From: Octopus sinensis
Taxonomy: Eukaryota
Assembly (NCBI RefSeq): GCF_006345805.1
Contig: NC_043026.1
Coordinates: 310,001 to 374,000 of the forward strand
Direction of reading: 5' to 3'
Length of the DNA: 64,000 nucleotides
The translations under genes and the position numbers were made by a program. The notes beneath the pieces are model-generated. The model saw only the letters and a list, made by a program, of their open reading frames with translations. It was not told the origin of the DNA and did no database searches. Below are positions 7,004 to 60,345 of this stretch, one piece after another (position 1 is the first letter of the stretch; every line of letters begins with the position of its first letter).

Positions 7004-8394
7004 GTTTGTTCTGTAACACAAGAATAGAAACTGGAGAGAGATCAAAGTGAAACGTCGGTCACGAAATCAGAAGAGTACCACCCTTTAACACGCCACTGAT
7101 GAAACTAGAGCGACCAACCGAAAGACTGTTTCTGCGAAACGCCGGATATTGTTTTACTTTCCTTTGTATAATTAGTATCATTGTTCTGATCTATTTGATT
7201 TGCTGAAAGCTTTCCCCCACATCCTCTTTCTTTACTACCCACAAGGGATTAAACACAGAAGGGACAAACAAGGACAGACAAATGGATTAAGTCGATTATA
7301 TCGACCCCAGTGCGTAACTTGTACTTAATTTATCGACCCTGAAAGAATGAAAGGCAAAGTGGGACTCGGCGGAATTTGAACTCAGAACGTAGCAGCAGAC
7401 GAAATACCTCTTTCTTTACTAACCACAAGGGGCTAAACATAGAGGGGACAAACAAGGACAGACAAACGGATTAAGTCGACTATATCGACCCCAGTGCGTA
7501 ATTGATACTTATTTAATCGAACCCGAAAGGATTAAAGGTAAAGTCGACCTCGGCGGAATTTGAACTCAGACGAAATACTGCTAAGGGTTTCGCACGTCGT
7601 GCTAACGTTTCTGCCAGCTTTCCCCAACATCAGAGAGATAAAACCTCATATATCTACGCAAAGGCACAACGCATGCACGTACGCATGGGTGCGCATGCAC
7701 GTATATACGCGCACGCTCGCACACACACACACACACACACATCTCTTTTACATATAGTCTGGACAGTCATGAACTGGAACAACAACAACAGCTCTCAGAA
7801 AGAGAGAAACAGAATCACAACTCAAAAGACAGATATTGGATACAATATTTAGATGGATTCTTTATTAACAGGTAAAACGTGACTTATGTGCATCACCAGT
7901 GGTGGTCAGCTGGATTGGGTGAATGGTAACAACAACAACAGCTGGAATGAGAGAAAGAGAATCACAACTCAAAAGACCGATGTTGGATGGAATATTTGTG
8001 TGGATTCTTTATTAAAAGGTAAAACGTGACTTATGTGGATCACCAGTGGTGGTCAACTGGATTGGATGGACGTTAACAACATCAATAGTATCAATGGATA
8101 TCATATGCTGGGTTAGTTCTGCTGCCTCAGGCGGATGAATATGACCATTGAGTCTGCTAATGCATAACCTGCAAGTAACAAATAACGACATCAACAACAA
8201 AAAGACATTCAAATATATCATGGGAAGGCTTTATACGTGGTCATTCGAATTACTAGAAATAGCAGTCGATTCTCGGTCAGAATGCTTTTATTCATAAATC
8301 AGCTCAATCAAGCTTATTGGTTCCTGAACAATAAGTACAAAATTAACATTTAGTACTACTACTCACAGTAAGACACACACCCACACACACACAC

Positions 8395-8433
<39 letters not shown>

Positions 8434-8866
8434 GAAGATTCAATATCACTTATTGTTGTTCCATATGACTTTCGATTTTGTATCAGAATAACGAATTGAA
8501 GGGTAGTGATCTGTCTCTTCGTACTGACAGTCAAATGGTCCCTCATTGATGGTCAACCAGCCTCTGTCCCCTTCACAAAAACCATGTAATGTTATATAGA
8601 AGCGACGTACATGTCTAAGGAGAAAAAGAAAAAAAAAACTTGTTTGGGTTTCAGAATATGAAAATCTAAACATGTATTAAATAGACTAGTATGTCCGCTA
8701 CACGCAATTGAATTAGTCAGTGTTTAATTAAAAATAGCCATCTGTGTATCATACTAAATGTGTATACACACAAAGATGTGGGTTTAAACACTCACACACA
8801 TAAAAACACACATATGCACTGAAACACGCACACACACACACACACACACGTACGCGCACACACACA

Positions 8867-8904
<38 letters not shown>

Positions 8905-9154
8905 CTCACACAAACACGCAGAAATGCGCAAATGTCAATACACCAACAAAGGCGAAATTACACACGAGGCAAACACTTTGGTACAAAAATAAATAAATCC
9001 ACAAACGGCCACAAACATACGAGCGATAACATTTTCCTGTATTAAACATCTTATCAAAGCGCTAAATAAATATAAAATGAATTCTAGTCAAAATAAATAA
9101 TATAACGGAACATAAAAATATCTAAACCCAACGCATACAAATAAATATAATTAT

Positions 9155-9351
9155 GGTAAAGTGGCTGTGTGGTAAGTAGCTTGCTTACCAACAACATCCT
9201 TCCGGGTTCAGTCCTACTGCGTAGCACCTTGGGCAAGTGTTTTTACTCTAACCTCGGGCCGACAAAAGCCTTGTGAGTGGATTTGGTAGACGGAAACTGA
9301 AAGAAGCCCGTCGTATATATGTATATATATATATATGTGTGTGCGTGTGTG

Positions 9352-9425
<74 letters not shown>

Positions 9426-9582
9426 TCGCCCCAACATCTCTTGACAACCGTAACTTAGCGGTTCGGCAAAAGAGACCGATAGAATAAGTATTAGGCTTGC
9501 AAAAAATAAGTCCTGTGTCGATTTGCTCGACTAAAGGCAGTGCTCCAGCATGGCCACACTCAAATGACTGAAACAAGTAAAT
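9155..9582 (+). mobile_element. tRNA-derived SINE family 1 with internal (TA)/(TG)n (also 19700-20128 +, 30312-30738 +, ~3600-4069 -, 48097-48503 -, ~58892-59332 -)
   Basis: A-box-like GTGGCTGTGTGGTAAG and B-box-like GGGTTCAGTCC; resembles octopus SINEs from memory. Confidence 0.75.
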
Positions 9583-11029
9583 GAGCACATTAAGGTGAAA
9601 ATATATTTTCGTGTTTCCCACTTTGAAACATGCTTCTTGATGTGAAATCCAGGAAACTGAGCTGTTTGTCACGGGAAAACATTTAATTTAAAAGTGTGTT
9701 GTTAAAAATACGGAAATATATTAGCAATAGAGAAATAACCTTTTTCAGCGGCGGTGGAATTGCTAGGAGGAATTACAACCGTGTTTCGTAGTCTGCTACC
9801 ACAACACCTCCTATGTAGGATCCATTAGCTCAAGTCATCATCAGGAGGAACCACGTTCGGTTTCGGCCCCTACTCCTCTACCGTTTTGACGTGGCGGGAT
9901 CCCCCCGCCCTTTCGGGAATGTCTTCAGCTCTGGTGTTGTGTGCATGTCTTCTTTCTTCTGTTCCCGGGCCTCTTCGATGTATCGTCAGCGAGTGTCAGC
10001 CGGTGACTGATAGACTTGTCAAAACTCTCCCTTTAAATACCTACCGCGAGGCTCCAGCAGGGAGCAGCAGCAAGTTGTCACGTGACACTGTCTCACCTTA
10101 ACTGAGTACTGAAGGCGCGTAGTTTTAGCCCGCGTATTCTCTAAACGACCGTCACCTGTCAGTCAGCGAAGCTGATTCAGTGTCAGCTTGTCTCACCAAG
10201 TGATATTATATCCGGCCGGCATGTTATGACTTTCAAGACATTTTCGGTCTTCCCGCTGTACGTATTCCTGTTTCTTTCAAAACATCAATATGAAGTAGTC
10301 ATTGACATCCGCATGCGCAGACCTATTTAGCCTCGGTATAGAAAAACAGTGATTAACAAATCACTAGCGTTGCTGTTAGTCAAGAGGCAGAATATATTTC
10401 ATTATTACGGGCGGAAGCGGTATTAGTTCAAAATTGCATTCTGTATGTTATAATAAATGAAGATATAATGTTGAAAGCCTAGAGATGCGTTGTTCATCCC
10501 CAGAAAGTGTCGCGTCGAAATGTATAGTGTTAAAATTTATCTATAGCGTACGTAAAGTGACATTTTTTAACAATATAGGTCTCTACATAACAAAATAAAA
10601 GAAGATGAAATATATATTTGCATACCTAAATCCCTCAATTGAGAATTGAACTCCAGTGGCTGAAGCTAGGTCGTTCCACGGTGAATTTTTCAACTTTTCG
10701 TGAGAGAACCAGCTTTGAAGGTTTGTATTTCGTCCATCAAATATTATAGTTACCACATCTGTTTGGTTTTTATAAATCACCAGTTTCACCTGTAAAATAA
10801 ATGAGCATGTAGCACACACATACAACCACATACGCTTACAACCACACACGCACGCACATACACACATAATAAAAAGAAATGGCTCAAGTTAAATAGATCG
10901 AGGTAATTTAATATATATTTCCTTCACTGTTAGCTTAATGTCCACTCTCATTTTTACTTCGTAATTCTCCTGACCGAAATTAATCTGTTTAACATGCGAA
11001 ATTAATGACTTTGATTGGTCACTCGCTCC

Positions 11030-11530
11030 ATACGTATCTTTTTTTTCCTGCCTTTAACCCTCCATCGCTGAGTATAGGCCACTTAGAGTTGAATTCCATG
11101 TCGCATAATTTTTCACTTCTGTACTTATACTCTTCTATGAATGTCCCCCTTTCTCTAGTTCCTTCTGTTGATCTACGCCATGAGTTCTTAGGCCTACGAT
11201 ACTTTCTATATCCAGCCGGATTACACTGTAAAGCACTTTTCGCTATATTTGGTGTGTCTTTTATAATTGTGCTACGAATCCACTTCTACTTTTTCTTAAA
11301 TATTTGCTCCCTAATCGAAACTTGATTTGTTCTTTGCCATAGCTCCATATTGCTTATGTGTTCGGGTCATCTAATTTTAAGTATACTACGCAAGCATCTG
11401 TTGATGAATGATTGTATTTGCTGATTTGACGTATCTTCCTATTTCAAAATGAATCATATAATATAATTAATTACACTTTACTTAAAAGTCTCATATGCTA
11501 CCATGATACTATCTGGTATATATCACTTAA
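11030..11530 (-). mobile_element. RTE-type fragment, copy A (also ~21590-22080 -, ~32200-32690 -, ~56935-57425 +; truncated at ~301-515 and ~63762-63975 +)
   Basis: Near-identical to 46130-46630; duplicated with the repeat unit. Confidence 0.65.
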
Positions 11531-12756
11531 CCTTCAATACAGTATGACCTCAAGAACTGGAAGTGTTATGTAAACTTGTTATTTCATAGTATTACTTAAG
11601 ATCTCGTGTTATTGCTTGCCGAGTTGTATGACACAATGTATTAATAATTTTCTGCAATACCCAAATAATACGTTCGTTTTTAGCTCCATTACATGCAGAT
11701 ACACCCCATCCCACAAGCACATACACACACAAACAAACACACACACAAACTAATGAATATGCATACATATATACATGGTGGCTGCCCCCTTGTTATCGAG
11801 TATGGCCATTGCACGAAGCTTAATCAATGTTGTTATCTTGCAATGCCTGTGCAAGAAGATTTTTTATTAAGTGAGGAAGGGCTCTGCACTGAGTCAATCC
11901 CACTCACTAAGCAACAGCAGCCATAATCCGAAAAGAAGAACAAGTCCACATCATCGGTAACCACTGAGCCGCAGGTTTTATATCGGAGTTATCCCACTTA
12001 CCTGAGCTACCTTCTCCTAGAAGGATGCTTTAACAAAGACTAGAAGTCCTTCATTCCCAATGGTTTAACCGCGTGATCGGGTACTCAGTCCGATTATTTC
12101 TATGTCCCCGCGCATGATACATCCTTAATACATTTATTCGATGGCCATTGACTCTCAAGAGTTCCTCCGCCCTTTCACGGGTTTTGTTATTCATCCCGCA
12201 TGGTGTCCAATAAACACCCTCCTCACAAAGCAAGCTTGGTGGGGTTGCCGGTTTACTCGCCGACGGCCCGACTATGCAACAGGCTGTACTCGGTTACATG
12301 TTACCAGTAGCACTCGAAAGTGACCTGACATACATACATACATAAATACAAACGTACACACATGCATATATTCATACAAACGTAACACATGCATACACAC
12401 ACATATATGTATATATACATGCATACACATATATGGATACACACATACATACATGTATGCATATATACATACGTATGTGTATACACATGCACACTAACGC
12501 ACACACATGCGCACAAACAAACAGAAGGAACGCAGCCCTGATAACGGACAGGCTCAATGACTTTTGAAAGACGTAACGGAAATTTTAGAAAAAATAAGTA
12601 AATGAGTGGAAATCGAACCGGTGCGTGTGTTAACTAATAAGGCACTAAAACGAAAATGACTCTCCCCACATACAATAAACTGTGCTTTAACACACGAATT
12701 CACATAAAGAATAACCAAATACAAAAACCATATCTTTCTATCTATCTATCTACTTG

Positions 12757-12792
<36 letters not shown>

Positions 12793-12796
12793 CTTG

Positions 12797-12851
<55 letters not shown>

Positions 12852-12980
12852 GTCTGTCTATTTATCTATCTATCTATCTATCTATCTTTTTCAATCTCTC
12901 CAAGAAGGGAGAGTCTTTCGTTCAAGATAAATATTCTTATTACTGCGGTTTGCCGCAGATAAGATTCTTTACAACGGCGA

Positions 12981-13380
12981 GCTAGCAGAAACGTTAGCAC
13001 GCCGGGAGAAATGCTTAGCGGTATTTCGTCTGCGTTACGTTGTGAGTTCAAATTCCGCCGAGGTCCACTTTGCCTTTCATCCTTTCGGGGTCGATAAATT
13101 AAGTACCAATTACGCACTGGGGTCGATGTAATCGACTTAATACCTATGTCGGTCCTTGTTTGTCCTCTCGGTGTTTAGCCCCTTGTGGGTAATAAAGAAA
13201 TACGTATTTCGTCTGTGGTTACGTTCCGAGTTCAAATTTCGCCGAGGTCGACTTTGCCTTTCATCCTTTCGGGGTCAGTAAATTAAGTACCAGTTATGCA
13301 CCGGGGTCAACGTAATCGACTTAATCCGTTTGTCTGTCCTTGTTTGTCCCCTCTGTGTTTAGCCCCTTGTGGGTAGTAAA
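12981..13380 (+). mobile_element. SINE family 2, head-to-tail dimer in intron 2 (also 23474-23875, 34084-34482 +; 44733-45133, 55535-55935 -)
   Basis: GCTGGCAGAAACGTTAGC A-box, GAGTTCAAATTCC B-box, central GTCGACTTTGCCTTTCATCCTTTCGGGGTCGATAAA, tail AGCCCCTTGTGGGTAATAAAGAAAT. Confidence 0.78.
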
Positions 13381-13819
13381 TGGGAAAAAAAAGGAAAAAA
13401 AAATTCTTTACAACACTACTTCGTCAACCTAGTAAATAAATTCTAGAAATCAAATATATTACAAACATAATTGAATTGATCTAAAAGCCGGTTAATCATT
13501 ATAACGATTATGAAGACAATAATGTGTTGCGCACTCGCGCGTTTGTGCATGCATAAACATACATACCTCATCAATTGGAAGATTGTTCCAGAAATTTAGG
13601 AAAGGATGTCGGAAGAAGTTAGGACAAAAGGTACCATTGCATTTGTCCACATTCCAGGTTGAAGGAAGTCCTATATTCAGGAATGAATTATAGACTTTCG
13701 AACCAGCTCCCTTTGATATGGCATATACTTCGATCCATTTGCTATCTGAAATAATAATTATAACAACAATAGTAATAATAATGATGATAGAGGTATCAGC
13801 ACCTAGCTATCAACACGGT

Positions 13820-14008
13820 TAAAAAAGATTGGTGCACGTGTGAAGGTGGAACACCTTCAAAGAATAAGCATTGCTTGGAACTGTAAGAATTCTTTGCAGA
13901 GTTCTTGAAGCATGGCCAGTAAATAAGCGTCACCTTAGTCTGCTAAGCTGTGGACAGCTGACACGTTCCATCATAACCAGCAAAATAAGTTGTGAGATTT
14001 CATATAAT
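13820..14008 (+). mobile_element. Old R4/Dong-type LINE 3' remnant ending in the (AAC/AAT)n tract (also ~24325-24500 +, ~34920-35105 +, ~44110-44295 -, ~54910-55095 -)
   Basis: Encodes ...[13 protein letters not shown], similar to the C-terminus of the young element (VLMGTAHILRKIL), followed by a short UTR and an AAT tail. Confidence 0.6.
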
Positions 14009-14009
14009 A

Positions 14010-14014
14010 AGAAT

Positions 14015-14058
<44 letters not shown>

Positions 14059-14140
14059 AAACAACAACAAAAACAACAACAATAACAATAACAATAATAA
14101 TAATAATAATAATAATAAGTATAATAATGATAATAATAAT
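14010..14140. repeat. (AAC)n(AAT)n compound microsatellite in intron 1 (all copies)
   Basis: Read directly from the sequence. Confidence 0.95.
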
Positions 14141-15429
14141 AAATACCCTGATGCTGTACCTGACAGTAGCTCTCATGGCTTCTGATCTTAAGTGATTGGA
14201 AGTGTTATCTTACGAATAGCAAAGGACCACGTTTCGGACTTCTCCCACTACTGGGACGAAGACCGCTTCGCTCAACAAACAAACAAACAAACAGCAACAA
14301 CAATATTAATATTGATTTCAAATTTTGGCACAAGGCCAGCAAATTATTGGAGAGAAAAGTAAATCGATTTCATTGACCTCACTCTTCAACTGGTACCGCA
14401 AAAAGCAAAATAAAGGAACAAAACAAAACAGTAATAATAAAGAAGATTCACTTACTTCTATAGAAGGAAATCTCGTTCTTGTTATTCGTACTGACGACTG
14501 TCATTATATTTTTCGGTGAGTAATTCTTACAAGCATGGCTGACTTTGTTGTAAGTGAAAAATTGCGATTGGCTCCTCTGAGCGAGCGCGGTGCAGTCGAG
14601 TAGGTTTCGTGTTGAGGAGAATTGTTCTGTTGGAGGTGTCCCAATATAACCATAGGAATAACCAGTTCCCAAACGTTTGTAGTAGCCATCAAGTTCCTGA
14701 TCTGAGGTAACAACCAGAATTGTTGTAAGGGTTAACAGCAGCACTGCCATTGCAGCTGGACGAGTAAAAGCTGACTGGAACATTCTTGACTCTATGATTG
14801 CTAAACTTAGACAGAAGCGGGAAAGAAATGGCATGAAAAAGAGAAGGAATGAGGTGGGGTGAAATATGAAGAGATTCAGCAATGAGACAAAATGAATTTT
14901 AATAAAGAGAGAACGGGGAAGAGAAAGACAAGGAGAGAAGAAAAAAGTTAGAGAGTAACAGAGAGAAATCCTGAAAAAGAAGAGAGAGATACAATGAGAA
15001 GATGGAAAGTGTTTGTGTGTGAGAGGAAGGTTGTTCGGAAGAGAAAACGCAAAAGGAATAACATATAATTTAGAATAAAAAATTTAAAATATATTACGGT
15101 TATTGGTAAAGACGCAGGTCCTGGAGAAGATTTTAAGTTGTATTCGGGGAAGATTTTAAGTTGTATTACGGGGCCCTGGTTTGATATATCCAGGGTTTTC
15201 AAGAATTGGTAGTAATTCTAGGGCCTTCATTCATGACCATTAATAACTGGGACTATAGAATATAGGTTCAGGCACAGCTGTAAGATTAAGGAGCTCTCTT
15301 GGTAATCACATGCTTCCCGGTTCAATCCCACTGAGCGGCTACTTGTGCAAGTGTCTTCTAGTATTGGCCCGGCCAACCAATGCCTAGAGAGGGAATCTGG
15401 TAGCCGGAAAGTATGTGGAAGGCCTTTGC

Positions 15430-15501
<72 letters not shown>

Positions 15502-16715
15502 GTCTGTCTGTCTGCTTGCCTGCCTGTCTGTCTGTCTGTCTGTATGTATGTATATATATACATACATACATACATACATACATACATAGACACACACATA
15601 TATATATATATATATATAGCTAGTTAGCTAGCTGTGAGAGAGAACGAAACGAGGGAAACAGTGTGTGTGTGAGAGAGAGAGAGAGCGTTTACTCGATACA
15701 ACAATTGAAAGAGCGCAAGATTCGCGTTTGCATGCGCAATCACCCTTACCTCAACTGTTGTCACACACCCACACGCTCTAATATTAACTCCAACATATCC
15801 TAGCCATAACACATACCCAAACACATAAAATGCAATGTGATAGAAAGCACACTTACTTTCAGTGAGGTAGGGCGGAGAGCGTATACTTCAGGTGGTTCTG
15901 TAAGGTCTTCTTGTAAGGAAGGTTCGTGAATGTCACGCCTTTATCACTGTTTCCCTTACTGTCTTCTCCCGTCAATATTACCCTCTATTACCCACAGCTG
16001 TGTCTTCAGATGTCTGAACACTTCGTAACCGTCAGTACTGGCCACTGCTTTCTCTCCTAATTTCTCTTATCAGTATTACTTACAGACTTAGACCTGTCCA
16101 TAAATAATCAAACCGTATAGACTGTCCATAAATGAGCAAAAGACAGAACCATCAACTCAGTTCAAGACTGTTTACTAATATGACTGTTTCTCCACAGAAG
16201 TGAAAATAAACCAGATTTTCCAATATGTACCCTTTGATTGCTATGAAGAATAAAAGGGCCTTCAATAGAGACATGCGTTTCACTAAGCTCGCAGAAAATA
16301 CGGCGGTGTGGTTACTGACGTCGTTCCAATGTTAGCAGTAAGGCTGTTGCGCTGTTTGTGATAGTGACGTTGTAGTTTTAATACCTGGTGATAGCGTGAT
16401 GTGATGTTGGTGTTTCTGTGAGTGGAGATATAAAAGCAGAACAATTGAGGTCGCTATACCGAAGACTTTCATTATAGGAAATCATTGAAATCAATCACCG
16501 TGGATGATGGAACAAGCACCTAGTCCTGACCTGTGTACACTCTTAATTTCAACCATTGATAGTTGATGTGTTAATAGATAATTTTCTTCATTTCATGACA
16601 AATAAACACGCCAACAGTTACAGACATCGAAGCATAACACGAACAGTTCACACCAGTTTCACTCTGCATGTTTTTACATGTATCTTAGGAATTAACGGTG
16701 CTTTGTTATAAGGTA

Positions 16716-16789
<74 letters not shown>

Positions 16790-16820
16790 TGCTTTATCAA
16801 TCAATCTATCTATCTATCTC

Positions 16821-16882
<62 letters not shown>

Positions 16883-16946
16883 CATTGCTTTATCAATCTA
16901 TCTACTATCTATCTATCTCCCTACCTTTCTATCTATCTATCAATCA

Positions 16947-17015
<69 letters not shown>

Positions 17016-17020
17016 CTATC
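16716..17020. repeat. (TATC)n microsatellite (also ~4663, 6018, 12735, 27200, 38992, 51455, 56030, 62378)
   Basis: Read directly from the sequence; length varies between copies. Confidence 0.95.
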
Positions 17021-17022
17021 TA

Positions 17023-17763
17023 TGTGTGGGTGGCTGATTATGGGCGTGCATTGTCTTACAACAATAGACATCGGCGTTAGTTACGAATTGCTGGTTTCCC
17101 CTTGTTAACCAACATTTCACTGTAGACCCCTTTTAAGGGACAATGTTGCAATAAAGAACCTTTTGCATCCCCCAAAACGCTTAGCATTACATTTTTCTGC
17201 CGAAGGTTGAATCTTGAATTTCTTTTCCACTGGTGATTCGTTTCGTTTCCGCTTCATACTAAACCTTTTCGATTCTGGCTCAAAGTTATGGGCCCCGATT
17301 TCATCAATCGTGTCTACTCTCACTCAAAACAACTTTAACTTCATCGCTGAAGCGTTCGAGTTAGAATTGACAAAAATCCACACGATTGCGCTTATACACA
17401 TCGAAAAGCTCTCTTGGCACCTTTCTCGTATTAACTCCGCAGAACCGAAGTTTGTCGTGGATACAGAATCATAATAATTTGCAGAGAATAAGCCATCTCA
17501 TCAATGGGAAATCGTAAATTGTTGAATCTCCACGTCACCGGTGACGGTTAATGTGTGTCCTTATCACTCCTCGTATTTCACGCTTGTCCGGCCATTTAAA
17601 ACATCTCGCTCTTCTCGTAAATACTTCTACGCAGTAGAGCGCTGTTCCTTAATTGTATTGAAAGCCTGCAAAGAATTGCAGCCGCTGACACACATTAAGA
17701 TTAGAGAGGCAATTTCACTGATCCATATTTTACCTTGATGCACACTTCCAGTAGAGCTGCCAC
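17023..17763 (-). mobile_element. Mariner fragment (unit copy)
   Basis: ORF track MRVDTIDEIGAHNFEPESKRFSM...KKFKIQPSAEK. Confidence 0.8.
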
Positions 17764-18736
17764 GTTTGTTCTGTAACACAAGAATGGAAACTGGAGACAG
17801 ATCAACGTGAAACGTCGGTCATGAAATCAGAAGAGTACCACCCTTTAACACGCCACTGATGAAACTAGAGCGACTAACCGAAAGACTATTTCGGCGAAAC
17901 GCCGGATATTGTTTCACTTTCGTTTGTATAATTAGTATCATTGTTCTGATCTATTTGATTTGCTGAAAGCTTTCCCCCACATCCTCTTTCTCTACTACCC
18001 ACAAGGGGTTAAACACAGAAGAGACAAACAAGGACAGACAAACGGATTAAGTCGATTATATCGACCCCAGTGCGTAACTTGTACTTAATTTGTCGACCCT
18101 GAAAGGATAAAAGGCAAAGTGGGCCTCGGCGGAATTTGAACTCAGAACGTAGCAGCAGACGAAATACCTATTTCTCAACTACACACAAGGGGCTAAACAC
18201 AGAGGGGACAAACAAGGACAGACAAATGGATTGAGTCGATTATATCGACCCCAGTGCATAACTGGTACTTATTTAATCGACCCAGAAAGGATGAAAGGTA
18301 AAGTCGACCTCGGCGGAATTTGAACTCAGAAAGTAGCGGCAGACGAAATACTGCTAAGCATTTCGCCCGGCGTGCTAACGTTTCTGCCAGCTTTCCCCAA
18401 CATCACAGAGATAAAACCTCATTTATCTACACACACGCACAACGCATGCACGTACGCATGTGCGCGCATGCACGTGTATACGCGCACGCTCGCACACACA
18501 CATACACACACATCTCTTTTACATATTGTCTGGACAGTCGTGAACTGGAACAACAACAACAGCTCTCAGAAAGAGAGAAAGAGAATCACAACTCAAAAGA
18601 CCGATGTTGGATACAATATTTATATGGATTCTTTATTAACAGGTAAAACGTGACTTATGTGGATCACCAGTGGTGGTCAACTGGATTGTATGGACGTTAA
18701 CAACATCAATAGTATCAATGGGTATCATGTGCTGGG

Positions 18737-18792
18737 TTAGTTCTGCTGCCTCAGGCGGATGAATATGGCCATGGAGTCTGCTAATGCATAAC
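18737..18792 (-). CDS. Copy B exon 5
   Basis: 56 nt ending in TAA. Confidence 0.83.
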
Positions 18793-21700: not shown

Positions 21701-23280
21701 AGTTCCTTCTGTTGATCTACGCCATGAGTTCTTAGGCCTACCATACTTTCTATATCCAGCCGGATTACACTGTAAAGCACTTTTCGCTATATTTGGTGTG
21801 TCTTTTATAATTGTGCTACGAATCCACTTCTACTTTTTCTTAAATATTTGCTCCCTAATCGAAACTTGATTTGTTCTTTGCCATAGCTCCATATTGCTTA
21901 TGTGTTCGGGTCATCTAATTTTAAGTATACTACGCAAGCATCTGTTGATGAATGATTGTATTTGCTGATTTGACGTATCTTCCTATTTCAAAATGAATCA
22001 TATAATATAATTAATTACACTTCACTCATATGCTACCATGATACTATCTGGTATATATCACTTAACCTTCAATACAGTATGACCTCACGAACTGGAAGTG
22101 TTACGTAAACTTGTTATTTCATAGTATTACTTAAGATCTCGTGTTATTGCTTGCCGAGTTGTATGACACAATGTATTAATAATTTTCTGCAATACCCAAA
22201 TAATACATTCGCTTTTATCTCCTTTACATGGGGATACACCCCATCCCACAAGCACATACACAGACAAACAAACACACACACAAACTAATGAATATGCATA
22301 CATATATACATGGTGGCTGCCCCCTTGTTATCGAGTATGGCCATTGCACGAAGCTTAATCAATGTTGTTATCGTGCAATGCCTGTGCAAGAAGATTTTTT
22401 ATTAAGTGAGGAAGGGCTCTGCACTGAGTCAACCCCACTCACTAAGCAACAGCAGCCATAATCCGAAAAGAAGAACAAGTCAACATCATCGGTAACCACT
22501 GAGCAGCAGTTTTACATCGGAGTTATCCCAGTTACCTGAGCTACCTTCTCCTAGAAGGATGCTTTAACTAAGGCTAGAAGTCCTTCACTCCCAATGGTTT
22601 AACCGCGTGATCGGGTATTCAGTCCGATTATTTCTATGTCCCCGCGCATGATACATCCTTAATACATTTATTCAATGGCCATTGACTCTCAAGAGTTCCT
22701 CCGCCCTTTGACGGGTTTTGTTTTTCATCCCGCAGTGTGTCGAATAAACACCCTCCTCACCAAGCAAGCTTGGTGGGGTTGCCGGTTTACTCGCCGACGG
22801 CCCGACAATGCAACAGGTTGTACTCGGTTACATGTTACCAGTAGCACTCGAAAGTGACCTGACATACATACATACATACATACATAAATACAAACGTACA
22901 CACATGCATATATTCATACAAACGTACACACATGCATACACACACATATATGTATATATATATGCATACACATATATGCATACACACATACATACATGTA
23001 TGCATATATACATACGTATGTGTATACACATGCACACTAACGCACGCACATGCGCACAAACAAGCAGAAGGAACGCAGCCCTGATAACGGACAGGCTCAA
23101 TGACTTTTGAAAGACGTAACGAAAATTTTAGAAAAAATAAGTAAATGAGTGGAAATCGAACCGGTGCGTGTGTTAACTAATAAGGCACTAAAAAGAGAAT
23201 GACTCTCCCCACATACAATAAACTGTGCTTTAACACACGAATTCACATAAAGAATAACCAAATACAAAAACCATATCTAC

Positions 23281-23330
<50 letters not shown>

Positions 23331-24554: not shown

Positions 24555-24616
<62 letters not shown>

Positions 24617-33889: not shown

Positions 33890-33939
<50 letters not shown>

Positions 33940-42197: not shown

Positions 42198-42243
<46 letters not shown>

Positions 42244-44003: not shown

Positions 44004-44044
<41 letters not shown>

Positions 44045-44068
44045 ATTATAATTATTATTATTGTTGTT

Positions 44069-44101
<33 letters not shown>

Positions 44102-52995: not shown

Positions 52996-54170
52996 CAGGC
53001 AAAGGGCTTCCACATACTTTCCGGTTACCAGATTCCCTCTCTAGGCATTGGTTGGCCGGGCCAATACTAGAAGACACTTGCCCAAGTAGCCGCTCAGTGG
53101 GATTGAACCGGGAAGCATGTGATTACCAAACGATCTCCTTAATCTTACAGCTCTGCCTTCGCCTATATTCTGTGGTCCCTGTTATTAATGGTCATGAATA
53201 AAGGCCCTAGAATTACTACCAACTGGAAAAGCTTCGTCTGGTCTGAACAGATCTATGCTCAGTTGCCATTATCACTTGTAGGTTGTTCCTATGCTGTTGA
53301 GTTTTTAGGTTCTTTCTCTTCGCTGTGTTGTCCGGTTTTACCCCTCTAGTACAGAGAGTTCGATTTAACCCAAGCCTGGTCGGTGTGGCATGGAGGACAG
53401 GTTGTTACCCAAGCCGTGTGTCCCTGCTCTCTGCATCATGGATGGATCCAAAAGAACAACAAGGAACGTTGCAATTTCCTATCAGCGTCCTCGTAGGAGT
53501 TGCAAGAGTGAAGTATTGAACTGATTCAGGGTGTTTGATGCCCGCTTTTACCTCAGTGTTTACACCCAAACACTTTCCCGTGGTTTAGTAATATTGCAAG
53601 GTAACGGAGGATTGAAATCAGATTTTTCTTTCCCCTATGATAGGTAGCCCCACTACCACCACCAACACTAGGCTAATGAGCCCCATCTGATCAACTGAAT
53701 TATTAATTAACTCAGATTTGGGAACCTGCCGAGTACGTCTACTCCGGATAAAACTAACCTGGGAACAACATTGGCTAAGAAGTGTTTCTAAACTCTTGAA
53801 AACCCTGGAAATCTCAAACCAGGGCCCCGTAACGAATACAACTTATTCTAAATTATATGTTATTCCTTTTGCGTTTTCTCTTCCGAACAACCTTCCTCTC
53901 ACACACAAACACTTTCCATCTTCTCATTGTATCTCTCTCTTCTTTTTCAGGATTTCTCTCTGTTACTCTCTAACTTTTTTCTTCTTTCCTTGTCTTTCTC
54001 TTCCCCGTTCTCTCTTTATTAAAATTCATTTTGTGTCATTGCAGAATCTCTTCATATTTCACCCCACCTCATTCTTTCTCTCTTTCATGCCATTTCTTTC
54101 CCGCTTCTGTCTAATTTTAGCAATCATAGAGTCAAGAATGTTCCAGTCAGCTTTTACTTGTCCAGCTGCA

Positions 54171-54801
54171 ATGGCAGTGCTGCTGTTAACCCTTACAACA
54201 ATTCTGGTTGTTACCACAGATCAGGAACTTGATGGCTACTACAAACGTTTGGGACCTGGTTATTCCTATGGTTATATTGGGACACCTCCAACAGAACAAT
54301 TCTTCTCAACACGAAACCTACTCGACTGCACCGCGCTCGCTCAGAGGAGCCAATCGCAATTTTTCACTTACAACAAAGTCAGCCATGCTTGTAAGAATTA
54401 CTCACCGAAAAATATAATGACAGTCGTCAGCACGGATAACAAGAACGAGATTTCCTTCTTTAGAAGTAAGTGAATCTTCTTTATTATTACTGTTTTTCTT
54501 TTGTTTTTTGATTTTGCTTTTTGCGGTACCAGTTGAAGAGTGAGATCAATGAAATCGAGTTACTTATCTCTCCAATAATTTGCTGGCCTTGTGCCAAAAT
54601 TTGAAATCAATATTAATATTCTTGTTGCTGTTTGTTTGTTTGTTTGTTGAGCGAAGCGGTCTTCGTCCCAGTAGTGGGAGAAGTCCGAAACGTGGTCCTT
54701 TGCTATTCGTAAGATAACACTTCCAATCACTTAAGATCAGAAGCCATGAGAGCCACTGTCAGGTACTGCATCAGGGTATTTATTATTATTATCATTTTTA
54801 A

Positions 54802-54856
<55 letters not shown>

Positions 54857-56108
54857 ATTATAATTATTATTATTGTTGTTATTGTTGTTGTTGTTGTTGT
54901 TATTCTTATTATATGAAATCTCACAACTTATTTTGCTGGTTATGATGGAACGTGTCAGCTGTCCACAGCTTAGCAGACTAAGGTGACGCTTATTTACTGG
55001 CCATGCTTCAAGAACTCTGCAAAGAATTCTTACAGTTCCAAGCAATGCTTATTATTTGAAGGTGTTCCACCTTCACACGTGCACCAATCTTTTTTAACCG
55101 TGCTGATAGCTAGGTGCCGATACCTCTATCATCATTATTATTACTATTGTTGTTATAATTATTATTTCAGATAGCAAATGGATCAAAGTATATGCCATAT
55201 CAAAGGGAGCTGGTTCGAAAGTCTATAATTCATTCCTGAATATAGGACTTCCTTCAACCTGGAATGTGGACTAATGCAATGGTACCTTTTGTCCTAACTT
55301 CTTCCGACATCCTTTCCTAAATTTCTGGAACAATCTTCCAATTGATGAGGTATGTATGTTTATGCATGCACAAACGCGCGAGTGCGCAACACATCATTGT
55401 CTTCATAATCGTTATAATGATTAACCGGCTTTTAGATCAATTCAATTATGTTTGGAATATATTTGATTTCTAGAATTTATTTATTAGGTTGACGAAGTAG
55501 TGTTGTAAAGAATATTTTTTTCCTTTTTTTTCCCATTTACTACCCACAAGGGGCTAAACACAGGGGGGACAAACAAGGACAGACAAACGGATTAAGTCGA
55601 TTACGTTGACCCCGGTGCATAACTGGTACTTAATTTACTGACCCCGAAAGGATGAAAGGCAAAGTCGACCTCGGCGAAATTTGAACTCGGAACGTAACCA
55701 CAGACGAAATACGTATTTCTTTATTACCCACAAGGGGCTAAACACCGAGAGGACAAACAAGGAACGACATAGGTATTAAGTCGATTACATCGACCCCAGT
55801 GCGTAACTGGTACTTAATTTATCGACCCCGAAAGGATGAAAGGCAAAGACGACCTCGGCGGAATTTGAACTCACAACGTAACGCAGACGAAATACCGCTA
55901 AGCATTTCTCCCGGCGTGCTAACGTTTCTGCCAGCTCGCCGTTGTAAAGAATCTTATCTGCGGCAAACCGCAGTAATAAGAATATTTATCATGAACGAAA
56001 GACTCTCCCTTGTTGGAGAGATTGAAAAAGATAGATAGATAGATAGATAGACAGATAGATAGATAGATAGATAGACAGATAGATAGATAGATAAATAGAC
56101 AGACAGAC

Positions 56109-56178
<70 letters not shown>

Positions 56179-59100
56179 GTAGATATGGTTTTAGTATTTT
56201 GTTATTCTTTATGTGAATTCGTGTGTTAAAGCACAGTTTATTGTATCTGGGGAGAGTCATTCTCTTTTTAGTGCCTTATTAGTTAACACACGCACCGGTT
56301 CGATTTCCACTCCTTTACTTATTTTTTCTAAAATTTTCGTTACGTCTTTCAAAAGTCATTGAGCCTGTCCGTTATCAGGGCTGCGTTCCTTCTGCTTGTT
56401 TGTGCGCATGTGCGTGCGTTAGTGTGCATGTGTATACATATACGTATGTATATCTGCATACATGTATGTATGTGTGTATGCATATATGTGTATGCATATA
56501 TATATACATATATGTGTGTGTATGCATGTGTGTACGTTTGTATTTATGTATGTATGTATGTATGTATGTATGTATGTATGTATGTCAGGTCACTTTCGAG
56601 TGCTACTGGTAACATGTAACCCATTACAACCTGTTGCATAGTCGGGCCGTCTGCGACTAAACCGGCAACCCCACCAAGCTTGCTTTGTGAGGAGGGTGTT
56701 TATTGGACACCCTGCCGCATGAAAAACAAAACCCGTGAAAGGGCGGAGGAACTCTTGAGAGTCAATGGTCATCCAATAACTGTATTAAGGATGTATCATG
56801 CGTGGGGACATAGAAATAATCGGACTGAATACCCGATCACGCGGTTAAAACATTGGGAGTGAAGGACTTCTAGCCCTTGTTAGGGCATCCTTCTAGGAGA
56901 AGGTAGCTCAGGTAACTGGGATAACTCCGATGTCATACTGTATTGAAGGTTAAGTGATATATACCAGATAGTATCATGGTAGCATATGAGTGAAGTGTAA
57001 TTAATTATATTATATGATTCATTTAGAGATAGCAAGATACGCCAAATCAGCAAATACAATCATTCATCAACAGATGCTTGCGTAGTATACTTAAAATTAT
57101 ATGACCCGAACACATAAGCAATATGGAGCTATGGCAAAGAACAAATCAAGTTTCGATTAGGGAGTAAATATTTAAGAAAAAGTAGAAGTGGATTCGTAGC
57201 ACAATTATAAAAGACACACCAAATATAGCGAAAAGTGCTTTACAGTGTAATCCGGCTGGATATAGAAAGTATGGTAGTCCTAAGAACTCATGGCGTAGAT
57301 CAACAGAAGGAACTAGAGAAAGGGGGACATTCATAGAAGAGTATAAGTACAGAAGTGAAAAATTATGCGACATGGAATTCAACTCTAAGTGGCCTATACT
57401 CCGCGTTGGAGGGTTAAAGGCAGGAAAAAAAAACATACGTATGGAGCGAGTGACCAATCAAAGTCATTAAATACGCATGTTAAACAGATTAATTTCGGTC
57501 AAGAGAATTACGAAGTAAAAATGAGAGTGGACATTAAGCTAACAGTGAAGGAAATACATATTTATTTACCTCGATCTATTTAACTTGATCCATTTCTTTT
57601 TATTATGTGTGTATGTGCGTGCGTGTGTGGTTGTAAGCGTATGTGGTTGTATGTGTGTGCTACATGCTCATTTATTTTACAGGTGAAACTGGTGATTTAT
57701 AAAAACAAAACAGATGTGGTAACTATAATATTTGATGGACGAAATACAAACCTTCAAAGCTGGTTCTCTCACGAAAAGTTGAAAAATTCACCGTGGAACG
57801 ACCTAGCTTCAGCCACTGGAGTTCAATTCTCAATTGAGGGATTTAGGTATGCAAATATATATTTCATCTTCTTTTATTTTGTTATGTAGAGACCTATATT
57901 GTTAAAAAATGTCACTTTACGTACGCTATAGATAAATTTTAACACTATACATTTTGACGCGACACTTTCTGGTGATGAACAACGCATCTCCAGGCTTTCA
58001 ACATTATATCTTCATTTATTATAATATACAGAATGCAAATTTGAACTAATACTGCTTCCGTCTGTAATAATGAAATATATTCTGCCTCTTGACTAACAGC
58101 AACGCTAGTGATTTGTTAATCACTGTTTTTCTATACCGAGGCTAAATAGGTCTGCGCATGCGGATGTCAATGACTACTTCATATTGAAGTTTTGAAAGAA
58201 ACAGGAATACGTACAGCGGGAAGACCGAAAATGTCTTGAAAGTCATAACATGCCGGCCGGATATAATATCACTAGGTGAGACGAGCTGACACTGAATCAG
58301 CTTGGCTGACTGACAGGTGACGGTCGTTTAGAGAATGCGCGGGCTAAAACTACGCGCTTTCACTACTCAGTTAAGGTGAGACAGTGTCATGTGACAACTT
58401 GCTGCGGCTGCCTGCTGGAGTCTCGTGGCAGGTATTTAAAGGGAGAATTTTGACAAGTCTGTCGGTCACCGGCTGACACGCGCTGACGATAAATCGAAGA
58501 GGCCCGGGAACAGAAGAAAGAAGACATGCACACAACACCAGAGCTGAAAACATCCCCGAAAGGGCTAGGGGCATCCCCCCACGTCAAAACGGTAGAGGAG
58601 TAGGGGCCGAAACCGGACGTGGTTCCTCCTGATGATGTCTTGAGCTAATGGATCCTACATAGGAGGTGTTGTGGTATCAGACCAAGAAACACGGTTGTAA
58701 TTCCTCCTAGCAATTCCACCGCCGCTGGAAAAGGTTATTTCTCTATTGCTAATATATTTCCGTATTTTTAACAACACACTTTTAAATTAAATGTTTTCCC
58801 GTGACAAACAGCTCAGTTTCCTGGATTTCACATCAAGAAGCATGTTTCAAAGTGGGAAACACGAAAATATATTTTCACCTTAATGTGCTCATTTACTTGT
58901 TTCAGTCATTTGACTGTGGCCATGCTGGAGCACTGCCTTTAGTCGAGCAAATCGACCCCAGGGCTTATTTTTTGTAAGCGTAGTACTAATTCGATCGGTG
59001 TCTTTTGCCGAACCGCTAGGTTACCGTTGTCAAGGCATGTTGGGGCGACAAACACAGACACACACAGACAGACAGACAGACACACACACACACACACACA

Positions 59101-60345
59101 AATACACACACACAAATATTCTCATACACACACATACATACACACACGCACACACACATATATACATATATACGACGGGCTTTTTTCAGTTTCCCTCTAC
59201 GAAATCCACTCACAAGGCTTTGGTCGGCCCGAGGCTATAGTAGAAGACACTTGCCCAAGGTGCTACACAGTAGGACTGAACCCGGAAGGATGTTGTTGGT
59301 AAGCAAGCTAATTACCACACAGCCACTTTACCATAATTATATATATTTGTATGTGTTGGGTTTAGATATTTTTATGTTCCGTTATATTATTTCTTTTGAC
59401 TAGAATTCATTTTATATTTATTTAGCGCTTTGATAAGGTGTTTAATACAGGAAAATGTTATCACTCGTATATTTGTGGCCGTTTGTGGATTTATTTATTT
59501 TTGTACCAAAGTGTATGCCTCGTCTGTAATTTCGCCTTTGTTGGTGTATTGACATTTGCGCATTTCTGCGTGTTTGTGTGAGCATGTGTGTGTGTATGTG
59601 TGTGTATGTGTGTGTGTGTGCGTACGTGTGTGTGTGTGCGTGTTTCAGTGCATATGTGTGTTTTTATGTGTGTGAGTGTTTAAACGCACATCTTTGTGTG
59701 TATACACATTTAGTATGATACACAGATGGCTATTTTTAATTAAGCACTGACTAATTCAATTGCGTATAGCGGACATACTAGTCTATTTAATACATGTTTA
59801 GATTTTCATATTCTGAAACCCAAACAAGTTTTTTTTTCTTTTTCTCCTTAGACATGTACGTCGCTTCTATATAACATTACATGGTTTTTGTGAAGGGGAC
59901 AGAGGCTGGTTGACCATCAATGAGGGACCACTTCACTGTCAGTTCGAAGAGTCAGATCACTACCCTTCAATTCGTTATTCTGATACAAAATCGAAAGTCA
60001 TATGGAACAACGGTAAGTGATATTGTATATTCTGCGTGTGTGTGTGTGTGTGTGTGTGCGTGTGTGTGTGTGTGTGTGCGTGTGTCTTACTGTGAGTAGT
60101 AGTACTAAAAGTAAATTTTGTACTTATTGTTTAGCTGCCAATCAGGCTTGATTGAGCTGATTTATGAATAAAAGGATTCTGACCGAGAATCGACTGCTAT
60201 TTCTAGTAATTCGAGTGACCACGTATAAAGCCCTCCCACGATATATTTGAATGTCTTTTGTTGTTGATGTTGTTATTTGTTACTTGCAGGTTATGCATTA
60301 GCAGACTCCATGGCCATATTCATCCGCCTGAGGCAGCAGAACTAA
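54171..60345 (+). pseudogene. Gene copy E: exons 54171-54465, 55171-55349, 57683-57846, 59852-60012, 60290-60345; premature stop in exon 2
   Basis: In-frame TAA at 55272-55274, the same lesion as copy C; splice sites otherwise intact. Confidence 0.82.

What the first reader, a model, noticed from the sequence alone, without database searches (positions are those of the whole stretch)
8113..60345. Copies are patchwork mosaics: exon-scale shuffling by gene conversion or unequal crossover
Seen: diagnostic sites group the copies differently along the gene. Upstream 570 bp deletion: A,B,D vs C,E. Exon 1 GTG/FSS vs GPG/FFS: A,D vs B,C,E. Exon 2 stop: C,E only. Exon 3 VKL vs VKV: A,D,E vs B,C. Exon 4: A~E, B=C, D=orphan. 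Intron 4 haplotype: A,C,E vs B,D,orphan. Copy B therefore has an A/D-type 5' flank, a C/E-type exon 1, a C-type exon 4 and a D-type intron 4. Inference: recombination reassorts the hypervariable exon onto different backbones, and the pseudogene copies (A, E, orphan) may act as donors of exon-4 variants.
Basis: partly seen in the sequence, partly recalled or inferred. Interest (0 to 1): 0.72.

Follow-up and report, generated by a model that had tools for sequence, protein, structure and literature searches.

The report
Mosaic tandem gene copies in octopus
Five 10.5-kb copies of an uncharacterised octopus secreted-protein gene are real patchworks of one another, produced by ordinary recombination between repeated genes (gene conversion plus unequal crossover), a well-known process seen here in a new family.

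Summary
The window is Octopus DNA carrying five full gene units (A, B, C on the minus strand; D, E on the plus strand), an orphan exon 4-5 (O) and a further fragment (F). A single tree is rejected: PHI p=0.0002-0.0007, neighbour similarity p=0.0002, partition-homogeneity p=0.0002, Hudson-Kaplan Rm=27. Segment trees also conflict with high bootstrap: D+E 96.5% around exon 3, but D+O 100% and A+O. sinensis copy 100% across exons 4-5. The best explanation is germline interlocus gene conversion (patches from about 100 bp to 4.5 kb) on top of a recent whole-unit duplication. Boundaries do not follow exons in general. Exon 4 lies inside a larger poorly homogenised 3' island. Its changes are almost all non-synonymous, but its rate equals that of the flanking non-coding DNA, so diversifying selection is suggested and not shown. 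The idea that pseudogenes act as donors is untested; one intronic patch in B is orphan-type. The same sequence types and inversion junctions occur in O. sinensis and O. vulgaris assemblies, which argues against assembly chimeras. The mechanism is ordinary and the interest modest.

The parts
8113..14750 (-). Copy A. Exons 14750-14456, 13745-13567, 10789-10626, 8614-8454, 8168-8113. The exon-4 splice donor is lost (AT at 8453-8452), so it is probably a pseudogene.
18737..25241 (-). Copy B. Exons 25241-24947, 24240-24062, 21337-21174, 19221-19061, 18792-18737. Intact 284-aa ORF.
29361..35856 (-). Copy C. Exons 35856-35562, 34845-34668, 31947-31784, 29833-29673, 29416-29361. TAA stop at 34744-34742 plus a 1-bp deletion in exon 2.
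41569..49468 (+). Copy D. Exons 41569-41863, 44368-44546, 46889-47052, 49027-49187, 49413-49468. Intact 284-aa ORF. Carries a D-specific retroelement insertion in intron 1 (about 42262-44050).
54171..60345 (+). Copy E. Exons 54171-54465, 55171-55349, 57683-57846, 59852-60012, 60290-60345. TAA stop at 55272-55274.
36539..37102 (+). Orphan O: the last about 85 nt of intron 3, exon 4 (36624-36784), intron 4 and exon 5 (37047-37102). D-type exon 4.
303..4126 (+). Fragment F: end of intron 2, exon 3 (772-935, TGA at 850-852) and the first part of intron 3, with a retroelement insert at about 1569-3170. About 5% from all five copies.
4127..4128 (.). Junction J1: intron 3 of F (+) abuts the inverted distal upstream region (4128-4760 = E 53532-52899).
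36539..36544 (.). Junction J2: the proximal upstream region of C (ends at E-equivalent 53541) abuts intron 3 of O.
53221..53790 (+). About 570-bp upstream segment present in E, in C (36295-36544, truncated) and at 4128-4439. Absent from A, B and D.
14667..18520 (-). Tract about 99.8% identical to 25160-29140. It runs from the 5' part of exon 1 of A, through the upstream and intergenic DNA, to the 3' flank of B, and matches the equivalent stretch from B to C.
19521..24021 (-). Tract about 99.8% identical between B and C (C 30130-34630), from intron 3 to intron 2. Within it is a run of 57 matching polymorphic sites, global p=0.0002.
18885..19044 (-). Short conversion patch in intron 4 of B. It is orphan-type (type II haplotype, nearly identical to the O. 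sinensis orphan Os), starts at the (TG)n repeat, and sits in an otherwise C-like background.
29866..29983 (-). Short patch in C just upstream of exon 4, at sites that differ from B. C there matches A/E-type copies, while B matches the O. vulgaris copy V1.
46895..47569 (+). D-E near-identity tract (E 57689-58363) covering exon 3 and the start of intron 3. Run of 25 matching polymorphic sites, pair p=0.0004.
34564..34957 (-). C-E identity tract (E 55059-55455) that contains the shared exon-2 stop. 12 variable sites, 0 mismatches, pair p=0.055.

Best explanation
The window holds part of a tandem and inverted array of about 10.5-kb units. Each unit encodes a 284-aa secreted protein with a signal peptide, a PAN/Apple-like domain and a beta-rich C-terminal domain with a weak resemblance to fibrinogen-related domains. 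The protein belongs to a family expanded in Octopus. The copies are mosaics because of germline non-allelic homologous recombination over evolutionary time. Three layers can be read. (i) A recent whole-unit duplication by unequal crossover left B/C and their upstream flanks about 0.2% diverged. (ii) Later non-crossover gene conversion overwrote stretches from about 100-200 bp to several kb. This includes exchange between the inverted blocks, where a crossover would have flipped the intervening DNA. (iii) Homogenisation is strong from the 5' flank to most of intron 3 (about 3% divergence) and weak from the end of intron 3 through exon 4, intron 4 and the 3' flank (6-11%). In that 3' region three old sequence types persist. 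Shown: discordant segment phylogenies, spatial clustering of incompatible sites, identity tracts, and types shared with other assemblies. Inferred: the molecular route (conversion versus crossover), the polarity of transfers (resolved in one or two cases only), and any selective reason why the exon-4 island persists.
For: Recombination statistics: PHI, NSS and Rm; robustness to CpG removal, to removing the 3' island and to removing B; ILD p=0.0002 with a different best tree in 4 of 6 gene-structure partitions; GENECONV-like runs. In a copying-model mosaic map, every copy's path cost is below all 200 order shuffles. Near-identity tracts of 3.9 and 4.5 kb, both at about 0.2%, are separated by 1-kb stretches at 3-6%. 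The B=C island of 209 bp over exon 4 is flanked by divergent intron on both sides. Polarity comes from O. vulgaris copy V1, which is B-like upstream and C-like downstream. Bootstrap conflict: D+E 96.5% around exon 3, against D+O+Os 100% and A+Es 100% over exons 4-5. 40 of 100 informative sites group a minus-strand copy with a plus-strand copy. Gene bodies of opposite blocks differ by 2.6-3.1%, while their 3' flanks differ by 6-9%. The junction-flanking DNA is 4-5% from the O. sinensis copy of the same junctions. Variable-site density in the 3' island is 3.2 times that of the rest, p=2e-14.
Against: There are only five full copies from one assembly, and no reads were available. Individual breakpoints are therefore unverified, and the assembler could have switched paralogs within the 97-99.8% identical parts. 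Direction of transfer is mostly unresolved. Some of the incompatibility (Rm=27) may be recurrent mutation. With B removed the PHI signal is marginal (p=0.057), though NSS stays at p=0.006. I could not establish whether the O. sinensis and O. vulgaris loci are orthologous to the window or are other parts of a larger array. The dating of the inversion relative to the exchanges is therefore an inference.
Confidence: 0.85

Rival explanations
1. Selected, cassette-like diversification. Exon 4 encodes a ligand-binding loop under diversifying selection. Conversion, with disabled copies and the orphan as donors, is favoured because it reassorts loop variants onto expressed genes. Such transfer could be germline or even somatic, as proposed for snail FREP3 or as occurs at chicken Ig loci.
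For: Exon 4 is the most variable exon across the whole family (entropy 1.70 vs 0.8-1.0 bits). Between the A/E and B/C types there are 12-15 non-synonymous and 0 synonymous differences. The changes cluster beside an invariant cysteine pair while scaffold residues are invariant. Sub-blocks of exon 4 occur in different combinations in O. vulgaris copies V1-V3. An orphan-type patch is present in B. Foldseek's top hits are fibrinogen-like recognition domains.
Against: Exon-4 divergence (about 9%) equals that of the adjacent intron 4 and 3' flank (7-11%), so no excess over the neutral rate is shown. Exons 1-3 also have dN>=dS. Three of the five copies are disabled, and the same stop was spread to or retained in two of them. 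The resolved patches lie in introns and leave exon 4 untouched. All copies are complete units with their own 5' flank, not promoterless cassettes. No expression or somatic data were available.
Confidence: 0.08
2. Assembly artefact. The mosaics are chimeras created when the assembler switched between near-identical paralogs or haplotypes.
For: The units are 97-99.8% identical over kilobases, which is the regime where assemblers err. No reads were available to check.
Against: The informative patches differ by 6-10% from the alternative type and include a 24-bp indel, so they are easy to place. The same haplotype types and combinations are found in independent assemblies of O. sinensis and O. vulgaris: A~Es at 2.0%, O~Os at 2.5%, C~V1 at 1.7%. 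Both rearrangement junctions are collinear over 3-6 kb in the O. sinensis assembly (L001). For O. vulgaris the only such match is L002 19370-23003 to window 3625-1, which stops short of the F|G junction at 4127. Patches of 100-200 bp are far shorter than long reads.
Confidence: 0.05
3. There was no exchange. The conflicting site patterns are parallel mutations at hypermutable sites in copies related by a single tree.
For: Octopus DNA here is rich in microsatellites and has some CpG sites. 8 of the 100 informative sites are CpG transitions.
Against: Incompatible patterns are clustered in space, not scattered (NSS 0.80 vs 0.57). The signal persists without CpG sites. Multi-site haplotype blocks with indels are shared. 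Microsatellite columns were masked.
Confidence: 0.02

Closest known systems
Concerted evolution by interlocus gene conversion in tandem paralogs. Examples: human G-gamma/A-gamma globin (own knowledge); HMA4 in Arabidopsis halleri, 'mosaic divergence in tandem paralogues', bioRxiv 10.1101/2025.10.29.685298; review of tract lengths PMC3924818.
   Same: Near-identical tracts lie beside diverged ones, phylogenies are segment-specific, and short non-reciprocal patches occur within recently duplicated units.
   Different: The family (octopus PAN + FReD-like secreted proteins) and the array architecture (alternating inverted blocks) are new. No population data are available here.
[quoted passage not shown]
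   Same: A homogenised gene body has a localised region that stays diverged and creates novel combinations.
   Different: Here the island extends into non-coding DNA (intron 4, 3' flank), so selection on the coding part is not demonstrated.
Pseudogene-to-gene conversion, e.g. CYP21A1P/CYP21A2 in the human RCCX module (own knowledge).
   Same: Disabled and intact copies sit side by side and exchange sequence. A disabling mutation (the exon-2 stop) is shared by two copies that are otherwise not closest relatives.
   Different: Direction of transfer is unknown here, and no phenotype is known.
Invertebrate immune-gene diversification. Sea-urchin Sp185/333 clusters with microsatellite-associated mosaic genes (PMC3091723); snail FREP3, reported to be somatically diversified by point mutation and gene conversion (PMC3313920).
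   Same: A lineage-expanded secreted family shows mosaic sequence blocks and abundant microsatellites. The C-terminal domain may be fibrinogen-related.
   Different: Breakpoints show no association with microsatellites. There is no immune expression evidence and no somatic data. Pfam Fibrinogen_C does not match the octopus proteins.
Programmed gene conversion from silent donor cassettes (chicken Ig pseudo-V genes, trypanosome VSG, Borrelia vlsE; own knowledge).
   Same: Partial or disabled copies lie next to intact genes, and there is a variable segment.
   Different: There is no single acceptor locus. The putative donors are complete units with their own 5' regions. There is no evidence of unidirectional or somatic transfer. 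See the membership test.

Membership tests
Interlocus gene conversion / concerted evolution in a tandem array | Different segments of the paralogs support different, mutually incompatible trees | tested here: met
   ILD p=0.0002. Bootstrap conflict: D+E 96.5% against D+O+Os 100% and A+Es 100%.
Interlocus gene conversion / concerted evolution in a tandem array | Incompatible sites are spatially clustered beyond chance | tested here: met
   PHI p=0.0002-0.0007 and NSS p=0.0002-0.0003.
Interlocus gene conversion / concerted evolution in a tandem array | Short tracts of one type are embedded in a background of another type on both sides, which is the signature of non-crossover exchange | tested here: met
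   The B intron-4 patch (18885-19044) and the C patch (29866-29983) sit within 0.2%-diverged B/C backgrounds.
Interlocus gene conversion / concerted evolution in a tandem array | Paralogs within a genome are more alike than orthologs between genomes | tested here: inconclusive
   Around exon 3 the window copies B-E cluster at 0.4-2.0%, against 4.6-5.0% to the O. sinensis copy. O. vulgaris V1, however, falls inside the cluster. Orthology and the source species of the window are not established.
Interlocus gene conversion / concerted evolution in a tandem array | Direct observation of new conversion events (pedigree, sperm typing) | not testable with these tools
   No reads or population data were available.
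Programmed donor-cassette gene conversion (Ig pseudo-V, VSG or vlsE type) | One expressed acceptor plus promoterless, partial donor cassettes | tested here: not met
   A-E are all complete five-exon units with homologous 5' flanks. Only O and F are fragments, and they are halves of a gene broken by a rearrangement.
Programmed donor-cassette gene conversion (Ig pseudo-V, VSG or vlsE type) | Transfers target the variable coding segment | tested here: not met
   The two patches with resolved polarity are intronic and stop 17-33 nt short of exon 4.
Programmed donor-cassette gene conversion (Ig pseudo-V, VSG or vlsE type) | Somatic variation relative to the germline | not testable with these tools
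   No transcript or tissue data were available.
Fibrinogen-related domain (FReD) proteins | Match to Pfam Fibrinogen_C or sequence match to solved FReDs | tested here: not met
   Pfam gives no hit at E<=10 for the octopus protein. A profile search of PDB sequences gives 0 hits at E<=10.
Fibrinogen-related domain (FReD) proteins | Fold similarity to FReD structures | tested here: inconclusive
   The AF2 model has pLDDT 66 overall and 80-94 in the C-terminal domain. Foldseek's top PDB hits are fibrinogen, angiopoietin and ficolin domains, but with E=0.013-0.1 and TM 0.25-0.40, so none is significant. In one distant relative (P0102) the domain directly follows a Pfam Fibrinogen_C N-terminal sub-domain. 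1 of 62 relatives hits Fibrinogen_C.
PAN/Apple domain proteins | Match to a Pfam PAN model above threshold | tested here: inconclusive
   The window protein hits PAN_3 at E=0.02-0.12, below the cut-off. 21 of 62 distant relatives hit PAN_1, down to E=1e-9. Foldseek hits the HGF NK1 N-domain with probability 0.87 but E=0.03. One source names a homolog 'Apple domain-containing protein'.
Sp185/333-like microsatellite-mediated diversification | Recombination breakpoints coincide with microsatellites | tested here: not met
   2 of 21 incompatible intervals contain a microsatellite, against 4 of 78 compatible ones. Microsatellite columns make up 6.8% against 5.3%.

The most novel reading that the evidence does not exclude
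The poorly homogenised 3' island is kept diverse by selection on exon 4. Under this reading exon 4 encodes the ligand-contacting loop of a divergent fibrinogen-like recognition domain. Short-tract conversion among intact, disabled and orphan copies would then serve as a germline (conceivably also somatic) generator of loop combinations in a cephalopod-expanded recognition family. That would be a cephalopod counterpart of snail FREP or sea-urchin Sp185/333 diversification.
Probability: 0.1. Interest if true: 0.7.

Novelty: new member of a known kind. Interest (0 to 1): 0.3.

Why it matters
This is a clean, statistically supported example of concerted evolution with a divergence island, in a large and entirely uncharacterised cephalopod gene family. 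The C-terminal domain of that family has 1118 cluster representatives and no Pfam model. It matters in two practical ways. First, RefSeq gene models in the O. sinensis array join or truncate exons of different units, so copy-aware annotation is needed. Second, it gives a starting point for asking whether the variable loop encoded by exon 4 is a recognition surface. The mechanism itself is textbook.

Tried and rejected
(1) The first whole-unit MAFFT alignment wrongly put C among the copies lacking the 570-bp segment, because C's upstream region runs into the inverted orphan. BLAST and a targeted alignment corrected this.

(2) Microsatellites as recombination hotspots: no enrichment at breakpoints. 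The B intron-4 patch does, however, start at the (TG)n repeat next to exon 4.

(3) A formal case for dN/dS>1 in exon 4 was not made. The count of 15:0 non-synonymous to synonymous differences gives only p about 0.035 under a 0.8 neutral expectation. The D-type lineage has dN about equal to dS. Exon-4 divergence equals that of the flanking non-coding DNA.

(4) Sequence-based family assignment failed: Pfam and a PDB profile search gave nothing significant.

I used the 78%-identical homolog P0002 as a proxy for the structure.

(6) A single simple inversion cannot by itself give the orientation of both junctions as they lie in the window (F+ | minus block | O+). It does explain the O. sinensis locus, so an additional duplication or insertion step is needed (reasoning).

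(7) The source assembly of the window was not identified. The O. sinensis and O. vulgaris loci I fetched are only 94-97% identical to it.

(8) Literature searches found no description of this family.

Full report
WHAT IS IN THE WINDOW

The 64-kb window is AT-rich, microsatellite-rich animal DNA built from about 10.5-kb repeat units. Each unit carries a five-exon gene.

- Copies A, B and C lie on the minus strand, and D and E on the plus strand. C and D are head-to-head.
- An orphan exon 4 + exon 5 (O, 36539-37102, plus strand) lies between C and D.
- A further fragment (F, 303-4126, plus strand: exon 3 and part of intron 3) lies at the left edge.
- B and D have intact 284-aa reading frames.
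- C and E share an AAA>TAA stop in exon 2, and C also has a 1-bp deletion.
- A has lost the exon-4 splice donor (GT>AT).
- F has an in-frame TGA.

The protein has a signal peptide, a weak PAN/Apple match and a C-terminal domain with no Pfam match. All 49 word-indexed homologs are 'uncharacterized' proteins of Octopus sinensis, O. vulgaris and O. bimaculoides. The window is therefore Octopus DNA. It is 94-97% identical to the loci I fetched from the O. sinensis (GCA_006345805.1) and O. vulgaris (GCA_951406725.2) assemblies, and is not the same sequence as either.

CHECK OF THE OBSERVATION

- The about 570-bp upstream segment is missing from A, B and D. It is present in E, and in C as far as C extends.
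- Exon 1 separates A, D from B, C, E.
- The exon-2 stop is in C and E only.
- Exon 3 separates B, C from A, D, E.
- In exon 4, B=C, D~O and A~E.
- The intron-4 haplotypes, including a 24-bp indel, separate A, C, E from B, D, O.

I aligned the five gene units. After masking gaps and simple repeats there were 5455 usable columns and 307 variable sites. The 100 informative sites fall into nine of the ten possible 2|3 splits: BC 34, AE 17, DE 15, AD 10, AB 7, BD 7, CE 4, AC 4, CD 2. At most two of these splits can fit one tree.

IS IT MORE THAN CHANCE?

- Incompatible sites are clustered in space: PHI p=0.0002-0.0006 and neighbour-similarity score 0.80 against 0.57, p=0.0002. The Hudson-Kaplan minimum is 27 events.
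- The result holds after removing CpG transitions and after removing the divergent 3' end. With B dropped it is weaker: NSS p=0.006, PHI p=0.057.
- I partitioned sites by gene structure, chosen a priori. The best 5-taxon tree then differs among partitions, and the partition-homogeneity statistic exceeds all 5000 permutations (p=0.0002).
- Pairwise runs of matching polymorphic sites single out several tracts:
  - B-C: 57 sites, global p=0.0002.
  - A-B in the 5' flank and exon 1: pair p=0.0002.
  - D-E over exon 3 and the start of intron 3: pair p=0.0004.
  - C-E, B-E, B/C-D and A-E: pair p=0.004-0.016.
- In a copying-model reconstruction each copy is a path through 3-7 nearest-relative segments. 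Each path costs less than all 200 order shuffles.
- With copies from the other assemblies added, NJ bootstraps conflict strongly. D+E has 96.5% and B+C 100% around exon 3. Across exons 4-5, D+O+Os has 100% and A+Es 100%.

ANATOMY OF THE MOSAICS

Along the minus-strand block two long stretches are about 99.8% identical at one unit's offset. The first is 14667-18520 against 25160-29140. The second is 19521-24021 against 30130-34630. They are separated by about 1-kb stretches that are 3-6% diverged. The equal, very low divergence of the two stretches fits one recent whole-unit duplication by unequal crossover, followed by overwriting of the stretches in between. This step is an inference.

Around exon 4, B and C are identical for 209 bp but differ on both sides. 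The O. vulgaris copy V1 is B-like upstream of exon 4 and C-like in intron 4. The ancestral B/C arrangement was therefore V1-like. C later received an A/E-type patch upstream (29866-29983). B received an orphan-type patch of about 160 bp in intron 4 (18885-19044), which is nearly identical to the O. sinensis orphan Os. These are short patches of one type inside a uniform background, which is the signature of non-crossover gene conversion. They stop 17-33 nt short of exon 4 and do not carry it. Tract ends elsewhere are mostly intronic and are not enriched at microsatellites.

WHY CONVERSION AND NOT ONLY UNEQUAL CROSSOVER

Forty of the 100 informative sites join a minus-strand copy to a plus-strand copy. 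A crossover between inverted repeats would invert the intervening DNA, so exchange between the blocks is most simply non-crossover conversion.

The blocks have been inverted for a long time. Both junctions are collinear over 3-6 kb with the O. sinensis locus at about 96% identity, and the 3' flanks of opposite-strand copies differ by 6-9%. Yet their gene bodies differ by only 2.6-3.1%, with tracts at 0-1%. The dating rests on a rough clock and on unproven orthology, so it is an inference.

THE 'HYPERVARIABLE' EXON 4

Variable-site density is 15% in exon 4 and 13% in intron 4 + exon 5 + 3' flank, against 4-6% elsewhere (Fisher p=9e-6 and 2e-14). The island is thus larger than the exon.

Evidence that exon 4 is special:
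- There are 12-15 non-synonymous and 0 synonymous differences between the A/E and B/C types. dN is 0.10-0.12, against about 0.01 in exons 1-3.
- The changes cluster at codons beside an invariant Cys-x15-Cys pair, while scaffold residues are invariant across the family.
- Exon 4 is the most variable exon family-wide, at 1.70 against 0.8-1.0 bits.
- O. vulgaris copies carry other combinations of its sub-blocks.

Evidence against reading too much into it:
- Exon-4 divergence equals that of its non-coding flanks.
- The D/O lineage has dN about equal to dS.
- Exons 1-3 also have dN>=dS.
- Three of the five copies are dead.

Diversifying selection is plausible for the loop codons but is not demonstrated. 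The alternative is that this region simply escapes homogenisation.

WHAT THE PROTEIN MAY BE

An AlphaFold model of the 78%-identical homolog P0002 is confident only in the C-terminal domain. Foldseek's best PDB matches are fibrinogen-like domains and the PAN domain of HGF, and none is significant.

A profile search found 1118 cluster representatives. The C-terminal domain recurs in large extracellular proteins together with PAN, discoidin, SUEL-lectin, TSP1, ZP and EGF domains. In one relative it directly follows a Pfam Fibrinogen_C N-terminal sub-domain.

I therefore describe it as a PAN + FReD-like secreted protein of unknown function. Membership of the fibrinogen-related family is not established.

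ARRAY ARCHITECTURE (OUTSIDE THE FINDING)

The minus-strand block 4128-36544 begins and ends within 8 nt of the same unit position, inside the 570-bp upstream segment. It is bounded on the left by F (ending in intron 3) and on the right by O (starting about 380 nt further along intron 3). F and O therefore look like the two halves of one gene broken in intron 3. F is an outgroup, about 5% from all copies. Both junctions exist in the O. sinensis assembly (L001). For O. vulgaris the only such match is L002 19370-23003 to window 3625-1, which stops short of the F|G junction at 4127. The junctions are thus old and not assembly artefacts. The O. sinensis locus fits a simple inversion. The window needs one further step.

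COMPARISON WITH WHAT IS KNOWN, AND VERDICT

This is concerted evolution by interlocus gene conversion and unequal crossover, with an island of divergence. Comparable cases are globin genes, RCCX/CYP21, plant R-gene clusters, Tigriopus GOT1 (PMC3728101) and A. halleri HMA4 (bioRxiv 10.1101/2025.10.29.685298). It lacks the defining features of programmed donor-cassette systems. It has not been shown to resemble snail FREP3 (PMC3313920) or sea-urchin Sp185/333 (PMC3091723) beyond mosaicism. It is a new member of a known kind and of modest interest.

Noticed in passing
window 4127/4128 and 36539-36544; L001 about 4300-4650 and about 20300: The three minus-strand units form a block whose two ends map within 8 nt of the same unit position (E-equivalent 53532 and 53541, inside the 570-bp segment). 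The block is flanked by F (ending in intron 3) and O (starting about 380 nt further along intron 3). F and O look like halves of one gene split by an old inversion or insertion. Both junctions are shared with the O. sinensis assembly (L001); the one O. vulgaris match (L002) ends at window 3625, short of the F|G junction at 4127.
   Followed up: partly
window 42262-44050 (ORFs 42485-43165 and 43203-43952, minus strand): There is a D-specific insertion of about 1.8 kb in the (ATT)n tract of intron 1. It carries reverse-transcriptase-associated ORFs (zf-RVT hit, E=4e-4) and looks like a young retroelement inside one of the two intact genes.
   Followed up: partly
window 1569-3170 (ORF 2202-2744, plus strand): An insert in intron 3 of fragment F encodes a gag-like protein with a CCHC zinc knuckle (Pfam zf-CCHC, E=1e-5). 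It is absent from the other copies.
   Followed up: no
window 8454-8452; L001 about 15850: Copy A's donor-site loss looks two-step. The O. sinensis copy Es has AACAACA|GTAAGT, where the last exon base G>A gives Gly>Ser and the donor is intact. A has a further G>A that turns GT into AT.
   Followed up: partly
L001 1-16192 and 10001-13696 (O. sinensis CM016888.1): RefSeq-type gene models look chimeric or truncated in this array. A 295-aa model spanning more than 16 kb ends in exons 4-5 of the unit whose exons 1-3 are annotated separately as the 221-aa LOC118768581. O. vulgaris models P0004 and P0019 read intron sequence or the wrong frame of exon 5.
   Followed up: partly
window 53791-53850 region (E), compared with A 15079-15140: E has a private deletion of about 58 bp in the promoter-proximal region, just downstream of the 570-bp segment. 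A and D carry a 19-bp tandem duplication there that B, C and E lack.
   Followed up: no
window 16668-17071, 27148-27543, 12730-12900, 14000-14130 and equivalents: Very long tetranucleotide (GATA/TATC-type) and trinucleotide (AAT/AAC) microsatellites produce spurious 'YLSIYLSI' and poly-N ORFs. Their lengths differ between units.
   Followed up: no
protein level: The C-terminal domain of about 140-180 aa has no Pfam model. It nevertheless has 1118 cluster representatives, often paired with PAN, coiled-coil, discoidin, SUEL-lectin, TSP1 or ZP domains. The consensus of distant relatives (W.LVFR...G.G..VY..W ... GC..D.GW..V.....C.W) resembles fibrinogen-related domain motifs.
   Followed up: partly
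L001 2703-2940 (copy Cs, O. sinensis): The O. sinensis copy in the position equivalent to C has its own independent 1-bp deletion in exon 2 and lacks the TAA stop. Copies at this position have therefore been disabled more than once.
   Followed up: no
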